Origin: Oikopleura dioica
Lineage: Eukaryota; Animalia; Chordata
Length of the DNA stretch: 64,000 bases
NCBI GenBank assembly: GCA_907165135.1
Contig: OU015566.1
Location: 1,364,001 to 1,428,000, forward strand
Direction of reading: 5' to 3'
Shown here: one piece after another, positions 2,731 to 40,318 of the stretch
Layout: every line of letters starts with the position of its first letter
Position numbering within the stretch: the first letter of the stretch is position 1
Translations under genes and position numbers: made by a program
Notes under the pieces: model-generated
The model's database searches: none
Seen by the model: only the letters and a program-made list of their open reading frames with translations
Told to the model about the DNA's origin: nothing

Positions 2731-2957
2731 GATGATGATTCATGTTTTTTTTCGGGGTTTGAGATTTTTCTTGATTTCAAAATATCCAGCCCTGCTCCCA
2801 AGGGGATTAGCAAGTTTTGATCTTTTTGCCGATTTAAGGACTCCTCTTGAAGATTTGTCTGGTAGACAAAGTGTCTAACAGACTTTTGCCTTATTTGTCT
2901 TGAAATTTGATTGACTATTTTTTCTCCGAAAACTTGGTTTTGAAGTTTTAACGAGCC

Positions 2958-3551
2958 CATTATTCAAGCCCGCGGAATATCCACCGATCGGAACAAACTG
3001 GAGCAACTGGAAAATCTGGGTTGAAACGAGCGACGAAAATGCTGTTGAAATGACACCGGATTTCTACACTCGCCTTGGCCGCTCTGGAATCAAAATCGAC
3101 GACGAAAAGTATTACACAGTCGACGAAATTCTCAACCTTCGATTTGGTAATCAAGCGATGAGTGTTCAGCGGGAAAAGAAAGCGTTTGCGATTGCGGCTC
3201 TTTTTTCGATTGGTATGTTTTTTTCTCCCTTTTCCAAAGAATAATCGACGAAATCGTAGTCGTTGCTGACAAAACACACGAAATTCTTCACATCGGAAAA
3301 GATCAACGAAACAGGTTCTGGCATCCAAGAGACAAAAAAGCGCGAAGAGTCCAGTGGATCAAGTCGAACGGCGAGGAATTCGACCTTCAAGAGGCGCTCT
3401 GTAATTTTTTCGCCGAGCAAAATAACAATCTGGGTAAGCTTTTTCCTCGAATTACTCAATTTTCATCAATTTAGGAGCGGAAGATGCAAAACTCTTCTCG
3501 TACGAAGAAAACGAGTTCATTGTGCGAATTCTCGGCGAAACTGTTTATTGA
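2958..3551 (+). CDS. Uncharacterised protein (three exons seen, 5' end unresolved)
   Basis: The frame stays open across introns at ~3213-3240 and ~3435-3475: LFKPAEYPPIGTNWSNWKIWVETSDE...IIDEIVVVADKTHEIL...ILGETVY*. Confidence 0.45.
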
Positions 3552-3588
3552 TACTGAAAATTTTGGATGAATAAATTTAGTAGAATTC

Positions 3589-5461
3589 TTATTTATCAAC
3601 AGTCGATTCAAAATAATTCAAATCTGTTTCTCGAGCTTGATTATTTGAAAAAACAGTTTTCTTTCTGAGTTTTTCGTAGACGAATGTTTCTCTTTTTCTC
3701 CAAGGTCGCCAAACTCCGTCGATTGGGAGTGCAGCAGGGTCGGATGCTTCTTGTTGGGGCTTGACTTGCTCGTCCTGAATTTTTAGGAAGCAAAACTTTC
3801 AATAAATCTTACGTAGTAATCAGCTAATTTGAGAAGAAACTTGTCGACCAACTCTGGATACGAATCCGAAACATCATTCCTTTCTCCTTCGTCCTCCGTG
3901 ATCGCGTAGAGCCTCACCAGTTTATCTTCTTCTACATCTTCGAGCGCAACTTTGTCCGGTTCATATTTCAAATTCTTTTTTTGCGAAAAAGAGCAGCCCC
4001 AGTGACAAGGGCGGCCGGTAATCAGCTTCCAATTTTCTGAACGGATGGCGGCTTTGACGGTCACGTCGAAAGTCCTGTTCGACAGGACTTGAAATTCCCG
4101 GCTGTCGAGTTCGCGCTTTGCCCTTTTGAGCGGATCCATGAAGTTGAGGAGGTGGGAGCGTTTTGGAACGGGTCGTAAATGGAAGAGATCTTGAGCAACG
4201 CCATCGAGAGGCAGCGTTTCAGGAGGAACTTCGCAGCCAGCAGATCGAAGGAGAGTCGGAAGCCAATCGGTCACGTGCATGACGTAAGGAAAGGACTTTC
4301 CCTTGAGACTTTCTGGCAGCTTGGGCGAGTGAACAAAAGCTCGACTTCTGATTCCCCCTTCGAAGATATTCCCCTTTTTTCCTCTCAAGGGCCAGTTTGA
4401 AGCTCCTTCTCTTGTTTGACCGCCATTGTCAGAAGTGATGATCAAAAGTGTATCTTTCCAAAATCCCTTTTCCTTCAGCGCTTTCACGATTTCCCCGATA
4501 AAGTGATCTACGACGGCGATTTTTCTAGAGAGCATTTTTCGATAATGCGTCCAAGGTGTTTCCTTGAAAAGGGTCGAGAACTCGGGAAGCCATTGCAGCG
4601 GACCGTGAACTTCTTGGAAAGAAAGAAATTCAAAAAGGGGTGTTTCAGGATCGAAATCATCGAGTTTTGCGATGAAATCATCCGCAATCGCCTTTGTCGA
4701 ATAAGTGCCGTTCAGATCGAATCTTATTTTCTCGGTTCCATTACTGTAAACTTCCCTAAAATCAAAACCAGCTGGTCTGTATATTTTTTTCTCCATAAGT
4801 TCCATCTTCTTTGGCGGTCCTTCAATTTCGCCTCTGTAACACGGGGAGTAGAGATAGCAGTTGTTTCCCGAGTCGTGATAAAAATAATCCTGTGAGCCGA
4901 GATAGAAGCCGAAGAATCTGTCGAAACCTCGATTTTGCGGGCAATGATATTTGGTATAAAATCCAAGATGCCATTTGCCATGCATTGAGGTTTGATAGCC
5001 ACACTGTTTGAATGCTTCAGGAAGGAGAGTCTCGGACAAGGGAATTGCTTCTGGTTCATCGGGCTTTATCACTCCTTGGGAAATATCATTTTTGGTTGAA
5101 TTTGGCTTCGGACCTGATTGAAGACCATATCGAATATTGTACCGGCCTGTCATTAGAGCTGCTCGAGAGGGAGTACAGGAAGGTTGATTGTAATACTTGT
5201 CGATATGCAGTGCATTTTTCGCGAGGTAATCAATATTGGGACTTTTGACATCGGGGTTGACATAGCCTTTGTTCGCATTTTGCAAACCTGTCATCGTGAA
5301 TTACCGATGCTCAAAAATAACATCCTTCAATACTGTCCTAAATCATCAAAGCCCAAATCATCGATGAGAATAAAAATAACATGTGGCTTTTTCGCGAAAC
5401 TTCCGTGTCCAAAACATTCTCTAAGAAACAAAAATATCAGAAAAGGCAGAAGTTTTCGCAT
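3589..5461 (-). CDS. ARSB-like: Arylsulfatase B-like secreted sulfatase
   Basis: Signal peptide MRKLLPFLIFLFLRECFG; KPHVIFILIDDLGFDDLGY; formylglycine motif CTPSRAALMTGRY; GKWHLG; SDNGG; NWPLRGKKGNIFEGGIR; C-terminal DP...GVWRPW. Confidence 0.93.
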
Positions 5462-7075
5462 CTATTTTGATTTGACTAGCGGCGAGGGGTCTTATCATGC
5501 GAAGATTGCCAGATTATTCCTGACCGGTAATTTGAAGCAATCGAAAATTCATTATTTAAGGGTGTCAAGAACTTTAAAAAAAAATCAAGTCTGCTTGGCG
5601 ATCAGAATTCTTGATATCCACCAATTTCGTTAAAATAATTCTAATCTGGCAGGCTAAAAGCATTCACGGTCAAATTTCGATGCAGTCAACGACAACGATG
5701 ACATGCGTATTTGTGCTTATATTTCGCGCGGACCATCAGAAAAATAAATATTCCTGTCAATATTCGCCGTTCACCCTCAGATAAAAAGAGGTATAAAAAG
5801 GATTATTTGTTCATCCGCGGGGGAAGTGTCTTATAGAAACAGTATCGAGCGCGCCTAATCCAATTTGATATACGAACAGATACTCGATGCATGCGAAAAA
5901 GTATACAACTCTTCCTCAAAATAATATTTTTTATTTTGACCTTGTAAACCTTTCTTGTTCATTTTTGACCAAAAAACGATTGCACCAGAGATTCTTCATC
6001 ATGGATCATGAGCTGGACCAATATGAATGTTTTTAACATCTTATTAAAGAAAATAAGTAAATTTGATTTGAAAAAATGTTAAAACGGGAATCAAGGAAGA
6101 GTTTGTCTGGAACGGTTTTCGCCACTTTCATCGAGCAGAAAAAGAAAGAAACGGTTCGACAGAAAACAGAGCCAAATGATCATTTATTCTTATCCCCAAA
6201 AATACCGCCTAAGAAAGTGCCACTTTAATTTATAGTGAAAAAAAGATCGTAGGAAAACACTCACGCGCCTCATTATTAAATACTACCTTTCAAACTTTTG
6301 AAACACTCACTCAAATTAAACAAGCGTCAGAATATGGCAAAGAAGGGTAGCAAAAACGGTATGTCTTGCGTCCGTGAATATTTCATAGAATTATGAATAA
6401 AGCTATGAAGTTCGCGCCGCGAACACATAGTTCCTAAACATATCATACTGTCAGATCTCGTTCGAACCGAAAGAGAAGTGGAAAAATGAAAAGCCCAGAC
6501 GCACATGACCACGATTTTAAAAGAGTTCATGACTCCGCCCAGGAAAGATTAAGAAAATACCTCTTCTTTTGTTGCTTCTAAGGGACCTTGAAAAAATCTG
6601 AAAAAAGCACCGTGATGATACGCACGAGTTCAGTTACGATACAAACACAGAAGTCTTCAGCGTCCGATTTTTATTTGTAATCGCGCCTGTTTTTCTCATC
6701 ATCTCCCTGCTCTGGCTAATGGTCGATTGGAAGGGTTATCTTTCTGCTAAATTTCGGCATACTTTTCATCGAAAGGTATTTGGACGAAAAATCCTTTGTT
6801 TTTATGAAGATTTTAAGGTGAGAAGATCGGTTTTGAAAAGCCCAAAGCTGAGAAAAACGGTAAAGCATTACAAATTCTAGACTGTTTTCTTTTCATATCT
6901 GCTCAATTTCATCAATAAAAGACTTTCATCCAACCATCAAAAATGGCTGAAAGAGCGAAAGTATTCATGTTCCAATAATAATTTATTAATCTCCAAAGAC
7001 AGTCAGGGAGAGATCAAAAGTAAAAATGAAGAAAATGTGAAGAGTAACTTTGTCTAAATGGGAGAGAGGGGCTGT

Positions 7076-30327: not shown

Positions 30328-33300
30328 CTAAACAAGGTGCAGCAAACTTAGAATTACAACCAAAATTGTAGCAATGAAGATTTTGTATTGAGAGCACGCT
30401 GTATCAGGCCAGATTTGCTTCTCGACAGGAGTTACTTTCGCATTCCATTGGCCGAAAATATCCCAGAGCATGTAGCAATTGATGATTTTTCGATTGACGC
30501 ATCGCTCAAAAGTCGAAAAACTTCAAGAAAAAATTAATATTTTCGATCAGAAAATCAGGAATCTTACCGACAAGGACTGTCACTCGGCTCATCCCTTCCA
30601 TCATCTGCTTCAACTAGGCAGTTATCAAACGTAAAAATGATTTCGGCAACTGGGCAGAAATCTTTGCCAGCCCGAAGCGCGTCTTTTGTACAAATCATTT
30701 CATCGAGTTCGAATCGCAAGTCATTCTTTTCGTCATTGTTCCAGAAAGTGAAAATTTCAGGGGTATCCTCGCAGTGCCCTGCGCGTATTTGAACGCATCC
30801 TTAATTTTTTGTCTCTGTAGAATGAGGGGGTTAAACTTACTGTCAAAGGAAGAATATCTACAGGAGCTTTCTGGATTGTCTGTCAGGGCACAGGTTTTAA
30901 TTGCGTCCTGAATATCAGATTTTGAGGATTTTTCACAAGATGAAAATGTCCTTTTATGACTTATTTTTAAAAAACTTACCGTAATAGAGCCAATCTCGCA
31001 ATTGACCCTTTCTTCGATCAATTCCTCGAGCTCCGGATTCAGTCCAGTTTCTTTCTTTTCCGGAATTCCTTCCCGCAACTTCACTTTTTTGATCGGCCGC
31101 CTGCTGATTTTAATCGGCGCTTTTGTCGTTTCCTCTTTCGGCTCCGTCGTCGTTGTTGTTTCATCTGTAGTGGAGGCTGTTGTCGTTGTCGTTGTCGATT
31201 TTGTCGTGATTCGATATTGTTTTGCTGGGGGAACATAAACTGTTGTCGTTTTTGTTGTCGGCTTCGTCGTCGCTGCTGGGGTTGCTTGATTGTTTCGAGG
31301 AAGACCCATCGATTCAGGAACGGTGAACGGGTTGGGAGGGATGTAAGGAGTGGCTTTTGTGGTTGTTATTCTGAAGATTTCCTTTGGATCAACGCCGGCT
31401 TTGATTTTTTCGATTTCGCGCTCGAGCTGCTCGAATGTGATTTCTTCGTCTTTTTGACCGGGAGAGATGTTGGAATAAGGACGCGACGGTAAACTCGGCT
31501 TGCCTGTATTTTCTGAAAAGTGAAAGATAGCTTATGTAGTTGACAGATAAAACGTACCTGGGAGAATATTTTTCTCTCGCATTTGATTGGATAATCCCGG
31601 CAAAGGATTGTAGTAGTAATCGGAAATGTCGAAATCGTAGTTTTGAAAGTCGTAGTCCAGTCCAGGAAGACTATCATAATCATCATAGTCGTCTAACCCC
31701 AAGTAGTCGTTCACAATGTCAGCTGGTAATCCTGCGTCATCGGAAGCGCCTGCCGCTGGCTGGGATGCTCCGTTATTGCATCTTACCCAGCCGATTTGGG
31801 GGTCGTAGCACATTCCGCCGGACATGACATCGTTGATTCCGACTTCGCTTTCCGCTAGAGAGCAAAATGTGATCAAATGATTGATATGAAAATTAGAAAA
31901 CCTTTTGTTGAAATCGTAGAAGCTGTCGTTGTTGTCGTCGTTGTCGTCGTAGTTGTCGTGATACAGGGCGGCGGAGGATTCATCTCTAAGTACAGTTGAG
32001 CCGCCAGTGCTCCTTGATAACCAGCATTGTAGTCCAGCGCCACTTCTGATTGTTTATAATTCGAGCGCTCATTGTAGTAACGATCGTTAATATCCGGCCC
32101 ACCAACAAGAGCGCCAAGGAGAACGTGCGGATTCGGATCAGGGCTCGTTTCTGCTACTTTCGTGCATGCAACTGGCTTGGGAGGACAAGAACTGGCTCGG
32201 TGGTGATATTTTGTCGGCGGATTGCGCCCCCAGCCGACGATGTAGGAGCGAACGTCTTTTCCGAGAAAGTAGTCGATTTGCGACTTGGCGAACTCGCGAT
32301 AGCGGCAACTATTGATTCCGAGATCCGCGGCGATTCCACAAACAAATGCGATATTTGCCGCGTAGCGATTTGGTCCCCACTCTGCCAGGAAAAGCAAACC
32401 TTTTGGGGTGAAAGCTTTTCCGCTGTCCTTCATAAACTTGTCGCAAAACCGCTTGATTGGAATATCATAATCAGCACTGGCAGTCATGTTCTTGAGCAAA
32501 ACTTGCGCTCCGATCGTCACGTCGTCCCAGAAATAAGCAAACGGATCAGCGGTGGAAAGCGCGAACTCTTCGTACTTTTTCTGCGCCGCTCTGAGATACC
32601 AACTGTCAGAAGTAGCGTAGTAAATCCAAAGCGCCGCCCAAGTTAGTTCGTCGCCGAAGCCAGAGGATTTGTAATACTTTTCAGCGTCTGGAATCGCTCG
32701 GTGGTAATAGTCGCGATATCGATCCGCGAATTCGTACAAGTCCCGAGCGTGTTTCAGGCATTTCGCGGCGAATTGAGGGTCGTCTTCTTGGAGCAAAATG
32801 CTCGCCGAAGCTAGAGCCGCCGCTGTTTGACCAGCTAGATCTGTTCCCGGCCGCTCGTCAGTAATCGCAAATGCTTTTCGCGCCCAAGTGATGTCTTCTG
32901 GTCTTCCCCAGCGCTTGTGGTCGATTTCTCCGATGCCCACTTGTCCGTAGAGCTTGTACTTTTCCGGATGACAGTTGATCAGGTACTCCGCTCCGTGTCG
33001 CAGAGCCTTTTTCAAATTATCCAGCTCTCCCGCCTCTACGTATTGTTCTCTGTACTGGACTCCTCCCCAAGCGAGCGTGGTCATACTGTAAGCCATCGGA
33101 AAATTGAATTTCATGAAATCACCGGCGTCGAAATAACCACCAGTTAAATCTTCGTTGTCATCGCCGAAATCTTGAAGGGCAGCGTCTCCGCGCCAGACGA
33201 TCCGGGAGTCGCCTTTTTTCCCGGAGCGTTGGGCTTCGTAGAAGAGAAGAGAGAGACCTTTCATGGAATAACGAAAACGCTAGCACGAAAATCTCTAGAT

Positions 33301-33601
33301 GCGGCGCATTAGAGCCCTGGCGCACCAATTTCGTGCTTCCAGAACATCAACTTTTTTCTCTAGATCTACCGGCTCGCTTGACAAAAGTTTCATTTCGACA
33401 TCATTCTGCCTCAGCTCCGGCTGGGTAAGAGAAATTCTCCAACAAAGGAGAGGTCCGAGAGCGAGATTTTTACGGTCAGTACTGTAATAACTTATTACTA
33501 ATAAGGATAGGTTACTAGAGATCTATTTCTCACAATATTTTTAGACGAGGGAGAAGAGCTGCGATGTTAGTAACCAGCGGTGGAACTGAGATCACCGTCA
33601 T
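30328..33601 (-). CDS. GH9 endoglucanase A: intact catalytic domain, Thr-rich stalks, two Cys-rich repeats, hydrophobic C-terminal tail (5' end uncertain)
   Basis: LLFYEAQRSG, GGYFDAGDFMKF, YHHRASSCP, SEVALDYNAG (catalytic Glu codon at 32044-32046); poly-Thr; SCRYSSFDRCV and PCRFSTFERCV repeats; ends KIFIATILVVILSLLHLV*. Confidence 0.9.
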
Positions 33602-33789
33602 GGATTACTATGACGAGGACGGAATCACGGACGACAAAAAATTAGTGCCTTCTCATTCACTCACTTTAAGCCGAAAAAGGCTGGTTGAATCTTTACACTG
33701 TTCTGGCCACTTATCAATCCCTCATTTAAAATGGTTCATTTTAATAAAAAAAACACGTTCCGCTGTTTACCAAATGCTTCAAACATTCG

Positions 33790-35344
33790 TCATTCCATTC
33801 CTATCAACTCTCCATAGTCAGGTGCAAAAGTCCCCATCGCAAGCAACTTCTGCCCTACTTTCGAGTCTCCCACTGACAGCGTACTTTTGTCTTCAATCAG
33901 TGTTCCTTCGATTTCTAGCGTTAGCACTCCAGCGGCGAGGGCTGTAAATCCAGCGTTAGTGTTCAGCGTAACCGTCGAATGTTGGTAGTCGCTTCGGTCA
34001 TCGAGAAACTCATCGAGCGGATTCGGACCGGCGACGACAGCGCCGTGCAAAATGTGAGGATTCGGGTCTTCCGAGTCTTTCTGCGCCCAGCCGCATTTTG
34101 CCGGTTTGTAGGGACACGAACTGGCCTTGTGGTACGGCCGCTGGGGGCCTCCGTTCTTCCCGTAGCCGACGACAAAGGATTGCCCGGTGTTTTCTCCGAG
34201 AACGTAGTACAGTTGCTTTTTCGCGAGAAGCCGGTATACATTCGGCCGGATGTTATTTTCCGCTGCGATGAGGCACAAAAAGCAGGAAGACGTCGTTGCT
34301 TCAAGAGTGCCCCATTCTGTCAGGAAAAGAAGCCCCGCCGGTGTGTAATCCGCCCCGCCACCGGGCAACAATTTATCGCAAAATCGAATGGTTGGGCCCC
34401 AATGCGGCTCAGCTTTCGTCAAACTTGCCAGCATCGTGTGAACAGCGATTCGTTTATCATCCCAGTTGTAATACTCCATCGGCTGGCGCTTGTTGAATTT
34501 TTTCATATGAGCAGTCGCTTTTTTGATCCAAATTGGCCGGGCCTCTCGATTTTGAACGGCCTTGGCGATCCAGAGCGCTGCCCAAGCGAGTTCGTCGTGA
34601 AAGCCGTTGTATGATTTGTAGCGATTGGCGGCGTCGAGGATCGATTCGTGATAACTGCCTTGGTACTGATTGGCGAATTTGTAGAGCTGCATTGCTTTTT
34701 CCATGCATCGGCGTTGGAATTTCTCGTCGAATCCGCGAAAAACCATGGATGTTGCGGCCAAGGCAGCGGCTGTTTCGGCGATGAGATCAGAGCAGGGACG
34801 CTTGTTCGTGCATTTGAACGAAATTTCGTCGAAAGCTTCGAGCATATCTTCCGGTCGCCCCCAGTACTCATTCGTGTCTTTTGTCTGGCCGACTTGGCCG
34901 TAGAACTCGAAGGGGTTAGTGTGGCATTTGATGAAGTAGTCTGCCGCCCATTTAAGGGCGTCCATAGCTACTCGATACTCGTTCGCCTGGACGTACGCTT
35001 CTTTAAACTCAACCACACTCCAGGCAAGAAGAGTCATCGCGCTGGCCATCGGGAATCCGAACTTGACAAAATCGTGGTCGACGAAATATCCACCGACGAG
35101 ATTTACTTTGTGATATCCTCCGTCCGTCAAGCCGGAATCTTGGCGCCAGTCGATTCGTTTTGGATGCATGCTGAGTTCTCCGCTTCGCTGGGCTTCGAAA
35201 AAAAGAAAGGAGAGGTGGATAGCATGGGCGACATCGTGGACGTATGGAGGGGTGGTGGTCGTGATGACGGAAAAGGCAGTAGGGTTTGGTGGTGGAGGAG
35301 TGTTGACAGCGACGTTTGCGCCGTTGAAGACAGGGTTTACTCGG
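33790..35344 (-). CDS. GH9 domain B with substituted catalytic residues; begins at a splice acceptor, no local start exon
   Basis: LFFEAQRSG...GGYFVDHDFVKF (DAGD replaced), PYHKASSCP, HSTVTLNTNAG (Glu replaced by Thr); acceptor ttctag|c at 35344. Confidence 0.88.
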
Positions 35345-35768
35345 CTAGAAATCCATTGTTACTAATTTCTTCTTGAAAAATATTTTTTTATTTTTGAAAA
35401 ATTTTTTTCTTTTTGAACAAAATTTTTTTTCTATTTTTTTCTTTTTTATTTTCCAAAAAAAGAAAAAAATATATAAATTATCCCTGAAGTGTCAAAATTT
35501 TCGCCTCCAAGAATCACCCTTCACTTCCTCTCCCCCTTTTGTTTCCTGAAATAATAAACTGTCATAAAATAAGCGCAAGCAATTCAACCGCGAAAACAAG
35601 AGGCCTTCATTCTATTCCAAAACGTTTAAAATTTCAACTGCAATTTTACAGTCTGCGAGAATCGATGTAACAATCGTACGAGTTAGTTTACACGCGTGTC
35701 AATATTGAAGTTTCTCGTTTTTAAGCCGACTGCGCTGGTCCCAGTCAGCAGAGATCTTCAAATCAGAC

Positions 35769-37967
35769 ATGAGCGACTTTTTCTGGAGCGATTCTATTTG
35801 GCTTCCGCCGGGAATAAAATGGACCGACTTAGAGAAATTTCAAAATGATGGAGGAAAAATCCCAGTTTTTGAAGATCTGTATATCATTTTTCCACTGTCG
35901 ATAGCGATTCTTGTGCTAAGAAAGACCTTAGAGAAGATTGTTTTTAAACCAATTGGTCACGGATAAAAGATTTTTTTAAGAGAAAAAAATTAACATTTAG
36001 GTCTTCGAGTTTGATGAGCTTTTAGGGTCAGCACTGACCGCCGATTTCCTAGGTCAATTTGGCCGGTCATTTCGAAATAGGCGAAATCCATGGTCCGTTT
36101 GTTCGGTCGGGTCAGCTTTTGGTCGACCAATCAGACCCGATCAGGTCAATTTTTTGGTCAGTGCCGACCCTAGGTGAACTTTGAGTTTCACCAAAAAATT
36201 TTTAAAAATTCTTATCAATAATTTTAAAAAATATATTTTAATTTTTAAAATCATTGATAAGAATTTTTAAAATTTTTTGGAGAAAACATGAATAATATTT
36301 TTCAACTGGGAAGAATTTCTTATATCATTTTGTTATCCGTTAAAAGCCGCTATTTTGGCCTGAAAGACAGAACCCGCAAAACGAATGTGCCAAACGAAAT
36401 CTTGGAAAAATATTTTCTTTCAAATCAAATCTTTCAAGAAAAAAATTTGAAAGAAGAGGACAAAGGTAAGTTCGCTTTTTATAAGCAATAAATTCACGGA
36501 AACGGGTCTAAATTCCAAGAAAACATTTCCCGATCAAATATTGAAATAAGCCCTCGCTAAGTTAATATCTTTAAGCGGTCAAAAGCGGTAAAAACTTTCA
36601 AATGGGCTTATAATTTTATGGCGCCATTTTTCTTAGATTTTTAAGCGCGAATTCTTGAAAAACTTGGAGAATCATGGGACGAGGGGAAAATCGAAAGATG
36701 GTTTCGAAATCAGCGAAGACTAACAATCAAGCCGAAAATTGGGAAATTTGGGGAAACCATGTGGAGAGCCGTTTACTACATTTTTGCTTTCAGGGATGTT
36801 CAGAAATTTTTTTTATGCTTGCATCTAAGGCCCTCGAACTAAAAATTGATTGAAAATCGACAATTTAGGAATTTCGCATGTAATTTATCAACAGTTTAAG
36901 AGTCCTTGCCTCCATTCTAGTGGAAAATTCTTGTGAGGGAATTTAGTTCTCTTCAAATACGGTATTATTTGAAGTGCTGTATTTGCTCACTCTGAGAGGA
37001 ATGTTTAATCTTTCTTGAATCATTTGAACAACAAAAAGCGCAGCTACGGAACTAGCGTCGTCATCAACAAAAGTTGGTTTTGGAACACGATCGAATGTTG
37101 GGAAAACTACCCGATGCAGGAGCTCACGCCCGATGTCCAGAAATACTATTTTCTTGGCTGTGGGCATGCTCTGTCGCTTTGTCTGACCTTGCTGACGGAT
37201 AATGTGAGGAAGGACTTCAAAGCGAAAATTGTTCACCACGCGGCTACGCTTAGTTTGTTGGTGTTTTCTTATGTTTGTGGGTATACAAGAGTCGGAGCGC
37301 TCGGTAAGCATTTCTAGAGACGCATATCAAAAACCGTAAATTTTATTACTCTTGTTCATGTTTTATCTTAAAATTTTGTCTAAGTTCGAATAGAAAATAC
37401 TACCATAAAAAATCTTAGCAGCGAATGAAAAAGTTGTGACTAACAAATGTATTTGGTCCTTGATGAAATTTTAACGACGAGAGTCTCTTGTAGGAAAGAA
37501 TGACAGCCAATTTTTTAGTTATGTGGCTCCATGATGGTTCTGATTTCTACCTCGAAATCGCAAAATCTCTCGTTTATCTCAAGAAACAGTTCCTTGCGGA
37601 TATTTTCTTCACAATTTTCGCCCTCGCCTTTTTCATCAGGTAAAAACCCCCTACTTCCCCATCTTTATCATTTCTCTCAGCCGAATCGTGTACTTTCCCT
37701 TTGTCGTGATTCACACAACTTTGGTCAAACCCATCGGTCTTTTTGGCCTCTTTCCTGGGTACTTTATTTTCAACGCTTTGTTGGGTACTCTTTTATGTCT
37801 CCACCTTTACTGGTTTTATTTAATTTGCGACCTTGCTTGGAAACTGATCAAGGGAGACCAAATTGCGGATAACAGGTACTACCAACAATTTTACCAAGCT
37901 CCCTGACCCGTTCAGATCCGACAATGAAGAATCTTCATCAGAAGACGAAGCAAAAAAGACCAAATAA
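35769..37967 (+). CDS. CERS: Ceramide synthase (Hox-like plus TLC/Lag1 domains)
   Basis: FFWSDSIWLPPGIKWTDL, IERWFRNQRR, KFGETMWR, RKDFKAKIVHHAAT, LHDGSDFYLEIAK, DQIAD; acidic tail SDNEESSSEDE. Confidence 0.93.
36022..36173. mobile_element. 152-bp MITE in CerS intron 1
   Basis: 17-bp TIR tagggtcagcactgacc / ggtcagtgccgacccta; degenerate 8-bp flanks atgagctt / gtgaactt. Confidence 0.8.
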
Positions 37968-38175
37968 ATGACCAAAAACTCGACCAATCTTCCCGAATGA
38001 TTCATATAAAAACATATGATGATGTATTTATAATTATTTCACTGTCAATCTTTAGATTAAATCTTAGGCATCAATTCATAATAAAATATTATGCAACAAA
38101 ACAAAACGAAAAGAAAGATTTTTGAAGAGCAAAAACGTTGAAGCCAAAAATTCCGTCAATCAAAAACAGTCTTAC

Positions 38176-38787
38176 GTATCAGCAGGATCTGGCAAAATTC
38201 TTAACCCGATTTTTCGACCTCTTAATTCTTTGTTTTCTTACCTTGATGGTGTTGTATCGAGAGTGTTGCCAGTTCCGTCTCTTTCCAATGTTGTTCCGAC
38301 TCTTTTCAGCGCCTCTTCTATCGTCTCAAAAGTGTTGATCAGCTCAATCAACAGAAGATCCGAGTTTGGCGGCCCGTTGGAACCATCAGGCTGCGTTCCG
38401 GTGAAAAACATTGACACTTCGCCTTGATGAGTTTGAAGTCGACCATTGTAGTTTTGATTTTTGAGGAGATAGACTTGTCCATCCGCGCTGACTTCGGCCA
38501 CTTGAGCGTCGAAAATCTCAATCGAAGTGACAGGAGAAGTGAAAGTCAATTTCATCAGCCATCCGAATCTGATTTCTCTTTTGATGCCTAAAAATTGGTC
38601 AGCTTGGCCTTTGCCGGTTAAAATTACCGATGGTAATTTTCGCAGAAAATCCTCCGGGCCAAAACTGCGAAATATCATAACTAGTCGGATTTGTCAATTC
38701 TGCCTGAGCGTCTGTTTCTCTTATCAGCCCAAAGCTCAGCGCCAAAAAAGCGACTTTAGGGAAATTTGAAAATTTCATTTCTTCCTT
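38176..38787 (-). CDS. Signal peptide plus CBM2-like cellulose-binding module; probably the 5' exons of GH9 gene B
   Basis: MKFSNFPKVAFLALSFGLIRETDA/QAEL..YDISQFWPGGFSAKITIGIKREIRFGWLMKLTFTSPVTSIEIFDAQV..DGQVYLLKNQNYNGRL (CBM2 W-GGF, GW and N--YNG pattern); a mini-exon ILPDPADT ends in ac|gtaag. Confidence 0.75.
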
Positions 38788-39179
38788 TTCTTTTCCATCA
38801 CTCTTTTTGAAAGAAGGCAAAACAGGTAAATGCGGAATTTGTTACTGACTATTTGAAGAATGAATGTCAAAAGTAGATTTGGCGCATGTTCCTTGCCCGC
38901 GGCGCTTTACAACTAATTCCGGGCAACGAATCACCCGCCGCGCCAGTCATCCCCTGCCGAGACGAGTGTTATCAGTGCTCCGTCAAGGGACGTAAACTCG
39001 CTTGAAAACTCATTATCTTTAATTTTAAATTGAAAAAAAAATAAAGAATAAATTATTATTTTAGTAAAATTTTAAATATTATCAAAAAAATAATTTAAAT
39101 TTTTATTTAAAAAAAAATTATAATTGAAATGATAATTTCAAAAAAAATTTTTTTATCGAATTATTTTTTTTAATCGTGA

Positions 39180-40318
39180 ATGTCGAAAATGGAAAAGTCA
39201 AGTTGAAAATCAACGTTGAATTCACCGAAAAGAAAAGACAGAAAAGCTCCTTTTCGAGCGGATAATCACGGGCTCAAGATTTTTAGTAAATGCTTCTGAC
39301 TTAACGACTCTGACCTTCGGAAGAGCATAATCGTTCTGTCTAAGCGCTCATATTTCCAACAGCTTCAAAGAGAAGAAACAAGGTAAGTAACGGAAAGAAA
39401 ATTCGGAAATTTACAAAAATTGAAGAAAAAAAATGATCGACTTTCAAAATTTGCTAAATGGAGAATCAAAATTCGTTTATTACAAGCAATGGCAGATAAA
39501 TATTGCTATTGGTGTTTTTTGCGTTGCTACGACTATCTGTAGGTCTTTATTTTTCAACCCTTTTGGTGACCAAATAAGTTACGACTGTGATGATCTGGTG
39601 GATGCGATTCGGAGGGTACGAGAAAAACGTAATTATGAAAAGAGATCAGCTTCGCCGAAAGCTTCAAATCGTCAATGAAAGACTTGAGAAGGCTGGATCA
39701 GCTGTGTCTTACGGTAAGATTGAGGCTTGACATGTGAAGATAACAGTTTTAGAGAAGAAGTATTTGGATATTCGGGAAATTTTAAGTGAGCTTAGACTAA
39801 ACTGAGCTTCGAATGAAATATTGCTTCGTGTAAATTTTCATTGAAAAGTTTTGACGGAATAATTTATAGCGATTGGTTAATTGTGAAAAATATATCATCG
39901 TTAAAATCGGATTTGTCCACTAGACATCATTTTATATGATCGAAAATTTCTCATCTTGAAAATTCAGCGAAAAAAAAAATCACGATATTTGAGAAGCGTT
40001 TTTATTTTCGGAAAATAAAGCTCTTCCTTGTTTTCAAAACTGAAACGACAAAGTTGATCATAAAAACATCCTTCCATTAAAACGCACTTCCATGTGAAAA
40101 TTGAGTTCATTGCCGCGGAAGACATCTACCAATAAACATTTTAGAGCGACGATATCCGCCAAGGCCCATTGTTGGTGCTGGGTTTGAAAGAAACGTCTGG
40201 CAGAAACGATCGTCGGGGGTTTCAAGAGCATCGAGGATTCAAACTGGCTCGGATTATTTTGAAAGAACTTCGGATCGAAAAAGAAATTTATCTGTTATTC
40301 AAGAATAAAAAAAATTGA
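39180..40318 (+). CDS. Possible uncharacterised multi-exon gene
   Basis: Short open exons bounded by gtaag/ttag, e.g. RRYPPRPIVGAGFERNVWQKRSS...EIYLLFKNKKN*; no family recognised. Confidence 0.3.

What the first reader, a model, noticed from the sequence alone, without database searches (positions are those of the whole stretch)
35344..38787. Ceramide synthase nested antisense inside an intron of a CBM2-GH9 gene
GH9-B starts at a phase-2 acceptor (ttctag|c cga gta) and has no signal-peptide exon before CerS begins. 2.8 kb upstream on the same strand, the signal peptide plus CBM2 exons end in a strong phase-2 donor (gat ac|gtaag, ~38176). Joining them gives SP-CBM2-linker(..DPADT-RVNP..TTTTPP)-GH9, a known invertebrate cellulase layout, with the entire CerS gene (35769-37967) inside that intron. 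The alternative is that CBM2 ends at the TAA within gtaag as a stand-alone protein.
Basis: inference. Interest (0 to 1): 0.8.

Follow-up and report, generated by a model that had tools for sequence, protein, structure and literature searches.

The report
Ceramide synthase nested in cellulase-like gene
In the tunicate Oikopleura dioica, a complete ceramide synthase gene lies backwards inside a 2.8-kb intron of a secreted cellulose-binding, cellulase-like gene; comparison with relatives supports this well, no RNA evidence was obtained, and it is a tidy but ordinary nested gene that corrects the published gene model.

Summary
It is not supported by RNA.

**Host gene model (minus strand)**
- Exon 1, 38778-38628: signal peptide and start of CBM2.
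- Exon 2, 38587-38242: rest of CBM2.
- A 24-nt microexon, 38199-38176.
- A 2,831-nt intron, 38175-35345.
- Exon 4, 35344-33790: Thr/Pro linker and GH9 domain.

**Nested gene**
- The ceramide synthase gene (35769-37967, plus strand) lies wholly inside the long intron.

**Key evidence**
- The 58 codons of exon 4 upstream of its first in-frame ATG are under strong purifying selection against a second O. dioica lineage (dN/dS about 0.03, synonymous sites saturated). They hold no in-frame ATG, so an upstream coding exon is required.
- In three other larvacean contig types, the CBM2 end, the linker and the GH9 start form one uninterrupted exon (...TTPSSRINPVF...).
- A second, deeply diverged O. dioica lineage (L012/L014) has the same exon lengths (151, 346, 24 nt) and the same antisense ceramide synthase.
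- The microexon is kept in three lineages, with mostly synonymous changes.

**Other points**
- The published model GH9-1 lacks the signal peptide and CBM2; its start appears to be a 7-nt artefact.
- The GH9 domain lacks the catalytic Glu, so it is a likely pseudo-enzyme.
- The RNA runs laid came from a divergent lineage and were uninformative.

This is a new member of a known kind, of moderate-low interest.

The parts
38628..38778 (-). Host exon 1 (151 nt): start codon, signal-peptide-like N-terminus (MKFSNFPKVAFLALSFGLIRETDA|QA) and first CBM2 motif (QFWPGGF). It ends in a phase-1 donor, ATCG|GTAATT.
   Evidence: The exon has the same length in L012 (2927-3077). dN/dS is 0.12 against L012.
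38588..38627 (-). Host intron 1 (40 nt, GT-AG). The same intron is 481 nt long in lineage L012.
   Evidence: It is absent in L001, where the domain is continuous.
38242..38587 (-). Host exon 2 (346 nt): body of the CBM2 domain and start of the linker (...ERDGTGNTLDTTPS). It ends in a phase-2 donor, TCA AG|GTAAGA.
   Evidence: The exon has the same length in L012 (3559-3904). dN/dS is 0.036 with pS 0.67.
38200..38241 (-). Host intron 2 (42 nt, GT-AG).
   Evidence: It is 37-42 nt long and poorly conserved in L008 and L012.
38176..38199 (-). Host 24-nt microexon (A ATT TTG CCA GAT CCT GCT GAT AC, coding -ILPDPAD-). It is phase 2 in and phase 2 out, with donor |GTAAGA.
   Evidence: It is kept in three lineages (window/L005, L008/L010, L012-L014). 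The seven full codons change almost only at synonymous sites (window against L012: 5 synonymous and 1 nonsynonymous difference; one Ala/Val replacement in L012), and the split last codon also differs (Thr, Asp or Glu, Ala). The AG and GTAAGA flanks are intact while the surrounding intron is unalignable.
35345..38175 (-). Host intron 3 (2,831 nt, GT-AG, phase 2). It contains the whole ceramide synthase gene on the opposite strand.
   Evidence: The equivalent intron in L012 is 2,245 nt (3966-6210) and also holds the ceramide synthase. No terminal inverted repeats were found at its ends.
35769..37967 (+). Nested ceramide synthase gene (TLC/Lag1p family), about seven exons. Approximate blocks: 35769-35960, 36339-36467, 36660-36797, 37039-37303, 37519-37639, 37681-37875, 37916-37967. 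The stop TAA is at 37965-37967 and AATAAA overlaps it at 37963-37968. The exon 3/4 boundary is not fully resolved.
   Evidence: Pfam TLC hits. Exon blocks are conserved with L012. The motifs KIVHHAAT and WLHDGSDFYLE are read. RNA reads of a related lineage skip 37296->37514, which fits the 37304-37518 intron.
33790..35344 (-). Host exon 4 (1,555 nt, stop included): Thr/Pro-rich linker (RVNPVFNG...TPPPP...TTTTPP) and a complete GH9 domain. The catalytic Glu is replaced (NEVA -> STVT), DAGD reads VDHD and HHR reads YHK.
   Evidence: PF00759, E=2.6e-112. Alignment. The pre-ATG part has dN/dS 0.031.

Best explanation
This is one four-exon gene on the minus strand. It encodes a secreted protein of about 691 aa (683 aa without the microexon). 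The layout is signal peptide, CBM2 cellulose-binding domain, Thr/Pro linker and GH9 domain.

Its third intron (38175-35345) contains a complete, independently transcribed ceramide synthase gene on the plus strand. The host pre-mRNA is transcribed through the ceramide synthase in antisense. Splicing then joins the 24-nt microexon, or possibly exon 2 directly, to the acceptor at 35344. Both joins are in frame.

The ceramide synthase uses its own promoter, in the 424 nt between its ATG and the host acceptor. It terminates about 200 nt before the microexon.

Shown here:
- the exon and intron layout;
- coding constraint on every host exon, including the ATG-less start of exon 4;
- continuity of the same protein in relatives;
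- conservation of the nested layout in a second O. dioica lineage.

Inferred:
- the actual splice in mRNA;
- secretion;
- a non-catalytic, cellulose-binding role, suggested by the loss of GH9 catalytic residues in this orthologue group.
For: 1. Exon 4 is open for 58 codons upstream of its first in-frame ATG. These codons include the conserved GH9 N-terminus, and two out-of-frame ATGs come first.
2. Those 58 codons evolve as coding sequence against L012: 30 synonymous and 7 nonsynonymous differences, dN/dS 0.031, pS 0.69.
3. Between 35345 and 35768 there is only one ATG-to-GT phase-2 mini-ORF (MTVYYFRKQKGER), with no hydrophobic core. There is also no block conserved with L012.
4. Genomic contigs of other larvaceans carry '...ERDGTGNTL[DE]TTPSSRINPVF...TTT..[FY][VT]HDLKHV..LLFFEAQRSG...' as one exon (P0129/L003, L006:3367-3816, L015:1402-1791). 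L001 and L011 have CBM2 and GH9 exons on one strand about 320-390 nt apart.
5. Joining the window's exon 2 donor to the 35344 acceptor recreates TTPS-S-RVNPVF exactly. Both candidate donors are phase 2, like the acceptor.
6. L012 (7.2 kb) and L014 (5.9 kb) come from separate ENA and JGI metagenome records. They hold exons of 151, 346 and 24 nt, then the antisense ceramide synthase. L012 also reaches the acceptor tttttag|T CGA ATC.
7. The microexon is flanked by AG and GTAAGA in three lineages and changes mostly at synonymous sites.
8. The layout PF00553 plus PF00759 is common in animal GH9 proteins.
9. The nearest minus-strand AATAAA after the microexon is 356 nt away, inside ceramide synthase exon 6.
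Against: - No RNA read across the junction was obtained. The four runs laid gave only reads under 95% alike, all partly aligned, and none on the CBM2 or GH9 exons.
- No transcript-derived protein with the joined sequence turned up in the two word searches that could have found one.
- A GTAAG donor in phase 2 carries an in-frame TAA in all three lineages. A CBM2-only product ending ...ILPDPADT* would therefore explain the coding conservation of the microexon equally well.
- The published Norwegian model GH9-1 starts MAAFFS-RINPVF, without CBM2. That start seems to be a 7-nt exon plus the read-through polypyrimidine tract (my inference).
Confidence: 0.85

Rival explanations
1. There are two separate genes. 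One is a small stand-alone secreted CBM2 protein (about 173 aa) that ends at the TAA inside the GTAAG after the microexon, or at the TAA after exon 2. The other is a GH9 gene with its own 5' end next to the ceramide synthase promoter. The ceramide synthase would then lie between two genes, not inside an intron.
For: An in-frame TAA follows both candidate donors in all lineages. The reference annotation models the GH9 part alone. No junction-spanning RNA was seen. Divergent promoters shared by neighbouring genes are usual in compact genomes (general knowledge).
Against: - The GH9 exon has 58 constrained codons and no in-frame ATG before residue 59, with two out-of-frame ATGs first.
- A product starting at Met59 would lack a signal peptide and the first conserved GH9 segment.
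- No alternative first exon is conserved between lineages.
- Donor positions +1, +5 and +6 of GTAAGA, which a mere stop codon does not need, are kept in three lineages whose neutral sites are saturated.
- Relatives have one continuous exon.
- No stand-alone CBM2 transcript product was found among proteins of 63-200 aa.
Confidence: 0.07
2. The gene makes both products. The full-length CBM2-GH9 mRNA co-exists with a short CBM2-only isoform, made by retention of the donor or early polyadenylation inside intron 3, and perhaps with an isoform that skips the microexon. Transcription of the antisense ceramide synthase would influence the ratio.
For: The exon 2 and microexon donors are both phase 2, so both joins are in frame. 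The skipped form recreates the sequence of relatives. The TAA sits directly after each donor. In haplotype L005 the exon 2 donor is the weaker AAG|GTTTGA.
Against: There is no expression data at all. The first minus-strand AATAAA lies 356 nt into the intron. Amino-acid-level conservation of the microexon shows that it is used, but not how often.
Confidence: 0.2
3. The GH9 part is a decaying remnant, cut off from its 5' exons when the ceramide synthase segment was inserted. The apparent splice signals would then be fortuitous.
For: The catalytic Glu is lost and DAGD is degenerate. No reads fell on it.
Against: - The 518-codon frame is intact in the window. About 90% amino-acid identity is kept against saturated synonymous divergence in L012.
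- The same catalytic substitutions occur in the orthologue of another species (P0002, 63% identical, also intact). The loss is therefore old and the protein has been maintained.
- Exon lengths and splice sites are conserved.
Confidence: 0.02

Closest known systems
Animal SP-CBM2-GH9 endo-beta-1,4-glucanases. Examples are the PF00553+PF00759 proteins of Oculina, Patiria, Ptychodera, Daphnia and bdelloid rotifers found. Abalone and Ciona enzymes are known from the literature (my recollection, not checked here).
   Same: The domain order is the same: N-terminal secretion signal, family-2 carbohydrate-binding module, Thr/Pro-rich linker and a GH9 (alpha/alpha)6 domain. The GH9 domain is 40-45% identical.
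   Different: The catalytic acid Glu is replaced (Thr here, Ala in P0002). DAGD reads VDHD here and VNHG or VDHG in relatives, and HHR reads YHK. It is probably not a hydrolase. The CBM2 is divergent: only the uninterrupted orthologue passes Pfam's threshold.
Published O. dioica (Norwegian) gene model GSOIDG00002601001, 'GH9-1' (bioRxiv 10.64898/2026.03.31.715263, SI2)
   Same: It is the orthologue of exon 4. It uses an acceptor 10 nt upstream of the one proposed here and reads on as ...RINPVFNGANVVVNTPPPP... It is identical to the L012 translation where the two overlap.
   Different: The model starts MAAFFS and has no signal peptide or CBM2. On L012 this start corresponds to ATGGCTG|GT (6095-6101) joined to an acceptor 10 nt upstream of the one proposed here, so the polypyrimidine tract is read as Ala-Phe-Phe-Ser (my inference). 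The model proposed here adds 173 N-terminal residues.
Intron-nested, opposite-strand genes of animals. Examples are OMG, EVI2A and EVI2B in a human NF1 intron and the many nested genes of Drosophila (textbook knowledge). Intron-nested genes are also mentioned for O. dioica in the CORAL preprint 10.64898/2025.12.04.692336.
   Same: A complete gene with its own promoter and poly(A) signal sits on the opposite strand inside one intron of a host gene.
   Different: Most O. dioica introns are a few tens of nucleotides long (here 40 and 42 nt), so a 2.8-kb intron holding a gene is unusual locally. The intron site is uninterrupted coding sequence in several related larvaceans.
Catalytically inactive glycoside-hydrolase-fold binding proteins, for example GH18 chitinase-like lectins that lack the catalytic Glu (general knowledge). 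This is a functional analogy only.
   Same: A glycosidase fold is maintained under purifying selection after loss of the catalytic acid, and is combined with carbohydrate binding.
   Different: The fold and family differ. No binding or activity data exist for this protein.

Membership tests
Intron-nested antisense gene pair | The whole nested gene (start to poly(A) signal) lies within a single intron of the host | tested here: met
   The ceramide synthase runs from its ATG at 35769 to its stop at 37967, with AATAAA at 37963-37968. The intron spans 35345-38175.
Intron-nested antisense gene pair | The host exons on both sides belong to one gene | tested here: met
   They form one continuous exon or sit in close tandem in five other larvacean contig types. 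The phases match. The ATG-less start of exon 4 is under coding constraint.
Intron-nested antisense gene pair | The flanking host exons are joined in mature mRNA | tested here: inconclusive
   Read laying on X4, X5, X6 and X1 gave only reads under 95% alike, from a divergent lineage, and none on the host exons.
Intron-nested antisense gene pair | The arrangement is conserved in related lineages | tested here: met
   L012 and L014 have the same exon lengths and the antisense ceramide synthase, at synonymous saturation.
Animal CBM2-GH9 endoglucanase | GH9 catalytic domain | tested here: met
   PF00759, E=2.6e-112, profile positions 3-443 of 444.
Animal CBM2-GH9 endoglucanase | Family-2 carbohydrate-binding module | tested here: met
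   The orthologue L001:2-451 hits PF00553 at E=5e-7, 30.4 bits against a cutoff of 24. P0123 and P0124 carry a precomputed PF00553. The window's exon 2 alone scores 15.8 bits because an intron splits the domain.
Animal CBM2-GH9 endoglucanase | N-terminal signal peptide | not testable with these tools
   No signal-peptide predictor was available. By eye: a charged start, a hydrophobic core VAFLALSFGLI, then TDA|QA. Orthologues are similar (L012, P0123, P0124).
Animal CBM2-GH9 endoglucanase | Catalytic residues: two Asp of DAGD and the Glu of NEVA | tested here: not met
   In alignment A2, DAGD reads VDHD, NEVA reads STVT and HHR reads YHK. P0002 has VNHG and SAVG. The neighbouring paralogue GH9-A keeps DAGD, SEVA and HHR.
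Ceramide synthase (TLC / Lag1p) | TLC domain with the Lag1p motif (HH...LHDxSD) | tested here: met
   PF03798 hits on two exons, at 6e-14 and 8.4e-6. KIVHHAATL and WLHDGSDFYLE are present.
Ceramide synthase (TLC / Lag1p) | Intact, expressed gene | tested here: inconclusive
   All seven exon blocks are conserved with L012. Reads of a related lineage are spliced across 37304-37518. The exon 3/4 boundary is unresolved.

The most novel reading that the evidence does not exclude
The gene-bearing intron may have arisen in the O. dioica stem lineage at a position (the Ser codon AG|Y of ...TTPSSRINPVF...) that is uninterrupted coding sequence in at least three other larvacean taxa. On this reading, a gene-sized segment carrying the ceramide synthase entered a coding exon or a tiny young intron. 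It was tolerated because it is spliced out. A 24-nt piece of it later became a conserved coding microexon. Nesting has since locked the two genes together in genomes otherwise known for extreme rearrangement. The direction of change (gain here or precise loss in relatives) could not be settled, because the relatives are unidentified metagenome contigs.
Probability: 0.3. Interest if true: 0.55.

Novelty: new member of a known kind. Interest (0 to 1): 0.35.

Why it matters
- **Annotation:** it corrects the model of one member (GH9-1) of the expanded O. dioica GH9 family. The protein gains a secretion signal and a cellulose-binding module. Together with the missing catalytic Glu, this recasts it as a likely secreted cellulose-binding pseudo-enzyme. 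That is relevant to how larvaceans handle the cellulose of the house.
- **Genome evolution:** it gives a clean, comparatively dated example of an intron-nested gene in a genome with tiny introns, with related species that lack the intron. Such a case is useful for studying intron gain or loss and microexon birth.
- **Limits:** it does not open a new kind of biology.

Tried and rejected
- **RNA reads.** No listed run holds the stretch. The four raw-read RNA runs of the same species label gave 21-43 reads each (4 for the single-cell run). All were under 95% alike and only partly aligned, on ceramide synthase patches and two AT-rich spots. They say nothing about the host junction.
- **Own start for the GH9 exon.** Internal initiation at Met59 is rejected: two out-of-frame ATGs come first, and the constrained codons upstream would go untranslated. 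SL trans-splicing at 35344 would not supply an ATG (my knowledge of the O. dioica leader, not tested).
- **Alternative first exon.** Only one phase-compatible mini-ORF exists before the ceramide synthase, and it is not conserved. A search for the published 'MAAFFS' start in the window found nothing.
- **Transposon-like ends of intron 3.** None were found.
- **Known RNA families in 33000-39600.** None at E<0.1.
- **Gene identifiers.** The identifiers of GH9-1 occur in no paper's main text.
- **Ceramide synthase exon 3/4 boundary.** It could not be fixed consistently in both lineages.
- **Not run.** The large representative-protein search and structure prediction were not run, because family scans and word searches left nothing open.


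Full report
**1. What is in the sequence**

Read on the minus strand, an ATG at 38778 opens MKFSNFPKVAFLALSFGLIRETDAQAELTNPTSYDISQFWPGGFSAKITI.
- Exon 1 ends at 38628 (ATCG|GTAATT, phase 1).
- A 40-nt intron ends at 38588.
- Exon 2 (38587-38242) carries the rest of a CBM2-like domain and ends ...ERDGTGNTLDTTPS + AG|GTAAGA (phase 2).
- After a 42-nt intron lies a 24-nt stretch, A ATT TTG CCA GAT CCT GCT GAT AC|GTAAGA (38199-38176, phase 2).
- 2,831 nt further on, ttctag|C CGA GTA (35345|35344) opens a frame that runs 518 codons to the stop at 33790.

That frame is a full GH9 domain (PF00759, E=2.6e-112). Its first in-frame ATG is codon 59 (35169), downstream of the conserved GH9 start PYVHDVAHAIHLSFLFFEAQRSG. 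Two out-of-frame ATGs (35234, 35225) come first.

Between the two host parts, on the plus strand, lies a ceramide synthase.
- Its ATG is at 35769 and its stop at 37965-37967.
- Two exons hit the TLC domain, and the Lag1p motifs KIVHHAATL and WLHDGSDFYLE are present.
- AATAAA overlaps the stop codon.

**2. RNA evidence**

No public run was listed as holding the stretch. I laid three bulk and one single-cell RNA run of the same species label on 33100-39050.
- All reads were under 95% alike and only partly aligned, so the runs come from a divergent lineage.
- They touch ceramide synthase patches. One spliced joint, 37296->37514, fits the intron 37304-37518.
- Nothing fell on the host exons.

**3. 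Relatives: one continuous protein**

A word search with the GH9 frame gave P0002 as nearest relative (63% identical).
- Its genomic contig L001 carries a complete CBM2 exon (Pfam CBM_2, E=5e-7, 30.4 bits against a cutoff of 24).
- About 320 nt downstream, on the same strand, it carries the linker and GH9 start.

A search with the window's CBM2 exon 2 returned metagenome gene fragments. The key one is P0129...GTGNTLDTTPSSRINPVFDP...TTTPPFVHDLKHVMHLSLLFFEAQRSGKL....
- Its contig L003 is genomic, since short introns lie elsewhere in it. The CBM2 end, linker and GH9 start form one exon.
- The same holds in L006/L007 and in the JGI contig L015.
- L011 has an intron of about 390 nt one codon away, apparently GA-AG.
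- None of these holds a ceramide synthase at this position.

Joining the window's exon 2 donor directly to 35344 recreates TTPS-S-RVNPVF, the sequence of these relatives. With the microexon, the Ser is replaced by R-ILPDPAD-T. Both joins are in frame.

**4. A second O. dioica lineage has the same nest**

A search with the first 200 residues of exon 4 found P0135. Its 7.2-kb contig L012 matches the published Norwegian protein.
- L012 has exon 1 (2927-3077, 151 nt), exon 2 (3559-3904, 346 nt) and the microexon (3942-3965, 24 nt, |GTAAGA).
- A 2,245-nt intron follows, with the ceramide synthase on the opposite strand.
- The acceptor is tttttag|T CGA ATC AAC at 6210|6211.
- An independent JGI contig, L014, shows the same up to its end.
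- blastn finds collinear conserved blocks only at host exons and ceramide synthase exons. It finds none in the 424 nt between the ceramide synthase ATG and the acceptor.

**5. Selection**

Window against L012:

| Segment | Synonymous divergence | dN/dS |
|---|---|---|
| Exon 1 | pS 0.67 | 0.12 |
| Exon 2 | pS 0.67 | 0.036 |
| The 58 pre-ATG codons of exon 4 | pS 0.69 | 0.031 |
| Microexon (7 full codons) | 5 synonymous, 1 nonsynonymous change | - |

- Synonymous sites are saturated (pS 0.67-0.92).
- The ATG-less start of exon 4 is therefore translated, and it needs an upstream coding exon. The only same-strand, phase-compatible, conserved candidates are the CBM2 exons.
- Three lineages keep the microexon with AG and GTAAGA flanks while the introns around it cannot be aligned. 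They are window/L005, L008/L010 and L012-L014, and are 79-87% identical in exon 2.
- The TAA inside GTAAG would also serve a CBM2-only product. However, positions +1, +5 and +6 of the donor are conserved too, which a stop codon does not require.

**6. The published model**

SI2 of bioRxiv 10.64898/2026.03.31.715263 lists GSOIDG00002601001 'GH9-1', starting MAAFFSRINPVFNGANVVVNTPPPP.... On L012 this start reads as ATGGCTG|GT (6095-6101) spliced to CTTTTTTTAG TCG... (6201 onward). That is a 7-nt first exon plus the polypyrimidine tract of the real acceptor (my inference). The window has no equivalent. The model thus lacks 173 N-terminal residues. The same preprint reports an expanded GH9 family expressed in the house-building epithelium, but says nothing specific about GH9-1 in the text I could read.

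**7. What the protein is**

The alignment with a termite enzyme, Ciona and coral proteins and the neighbouring paralogue GH9-A shows:
- DAGD -> VDHD;
- HHR -> YHK;
- catalytic NEVA -> STVT.

P0002 shows VNHG and SAVG, and L003 shows VDHG. GH9-A keeps all three motifs. The loss is old and the protein is maintained, so a secreted cellulose-binding pseudo-enzyme is the most likely role (inference). This agrees with another first-stage note on this window.

**8. Rivals**

- Two separate genes: about 0.07.
- Full-length and short isoforms together: about 0.2, and not exclusive of the main reading.
- Decaying remnant: about 0.02.

The reasons are given in the Rival explanations section.

**9. Origin**

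An intron in this linker is present in O. dioica, L001 and L011 and absent in L003, L006 and L015. Without knowing the species, gain and loss cannot be told apart. No inverted repeats mark the intron ends.

**10. Verdict**

It is a nested gene of a known kind and a gene-model correction, of moderate-low interest.

Noticed in passing
window 38800-38965 (just upstream of the host ATG at 38778); L012 2715-2895: A non-coding block about 88% identical over roughly 150 nt between two lineages whose synonymous sites are saturated. RNAalifold predicts a stem with two compensatory pairs (GGCGC..GCGCC against GGCAA..TTGCC). There is no Rfam hit. It lies between divergently transcribed genes and could be a promoter or 5'UTR element, or a small RNA.
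   Followed up: partly
window 33790-35344 and 31873-33279: GH9-B lacks the catalytic Glu and has a degenerate DAGD motif. The adjacent paralogue GH9-A (PF00759, E=9.8e-135) keeps DAGD, HHR and SEVA. The orthologue in another species (P0002) shares the losses.
   Followed up: partly
window 36023-36172 and 36185-36287 (ceramide synthase intron 1): Two palindromic, MITE-like elements: 17-nt inverted ends 116 nt apart, and a 49-nt-arm hairpin.
   Followed up: no
window 33481-33513 and 35388-35412: Short piles of RNA reads (88-95% alike) whose flanks are unlike the window on both sides. They are probably a repeated or low-complexity motif from other transcripts. Unexplained.
   Followed up: no
window 33564-33947 (+): A plus-strand ORF (MLVTSGGTEITVMDYYDEDG...) lies between GH9-B and GH9-A, opposite to both. 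It was not examined.
   Followed up: no
L011 669-1057: In another larvacean contig the linker intron seems to be a non-canonical GA-AG intron (TCA AG|GACTGG ... AAACAAG|G ATT AAT). It lies one codon away from the O. dioica intron site.
   Followed up: partly
L012 364-1536; window beyond 39433 (+): Upstream neighbours are conserved between the lineages: a divergently transcribed small gene (MIDFQNLL.../MMDFKAFF...) and, in L012, an Fe/Mn superoxide dismutase further on. Local gene order therefore extends beyond the nest.
   Followed up: no
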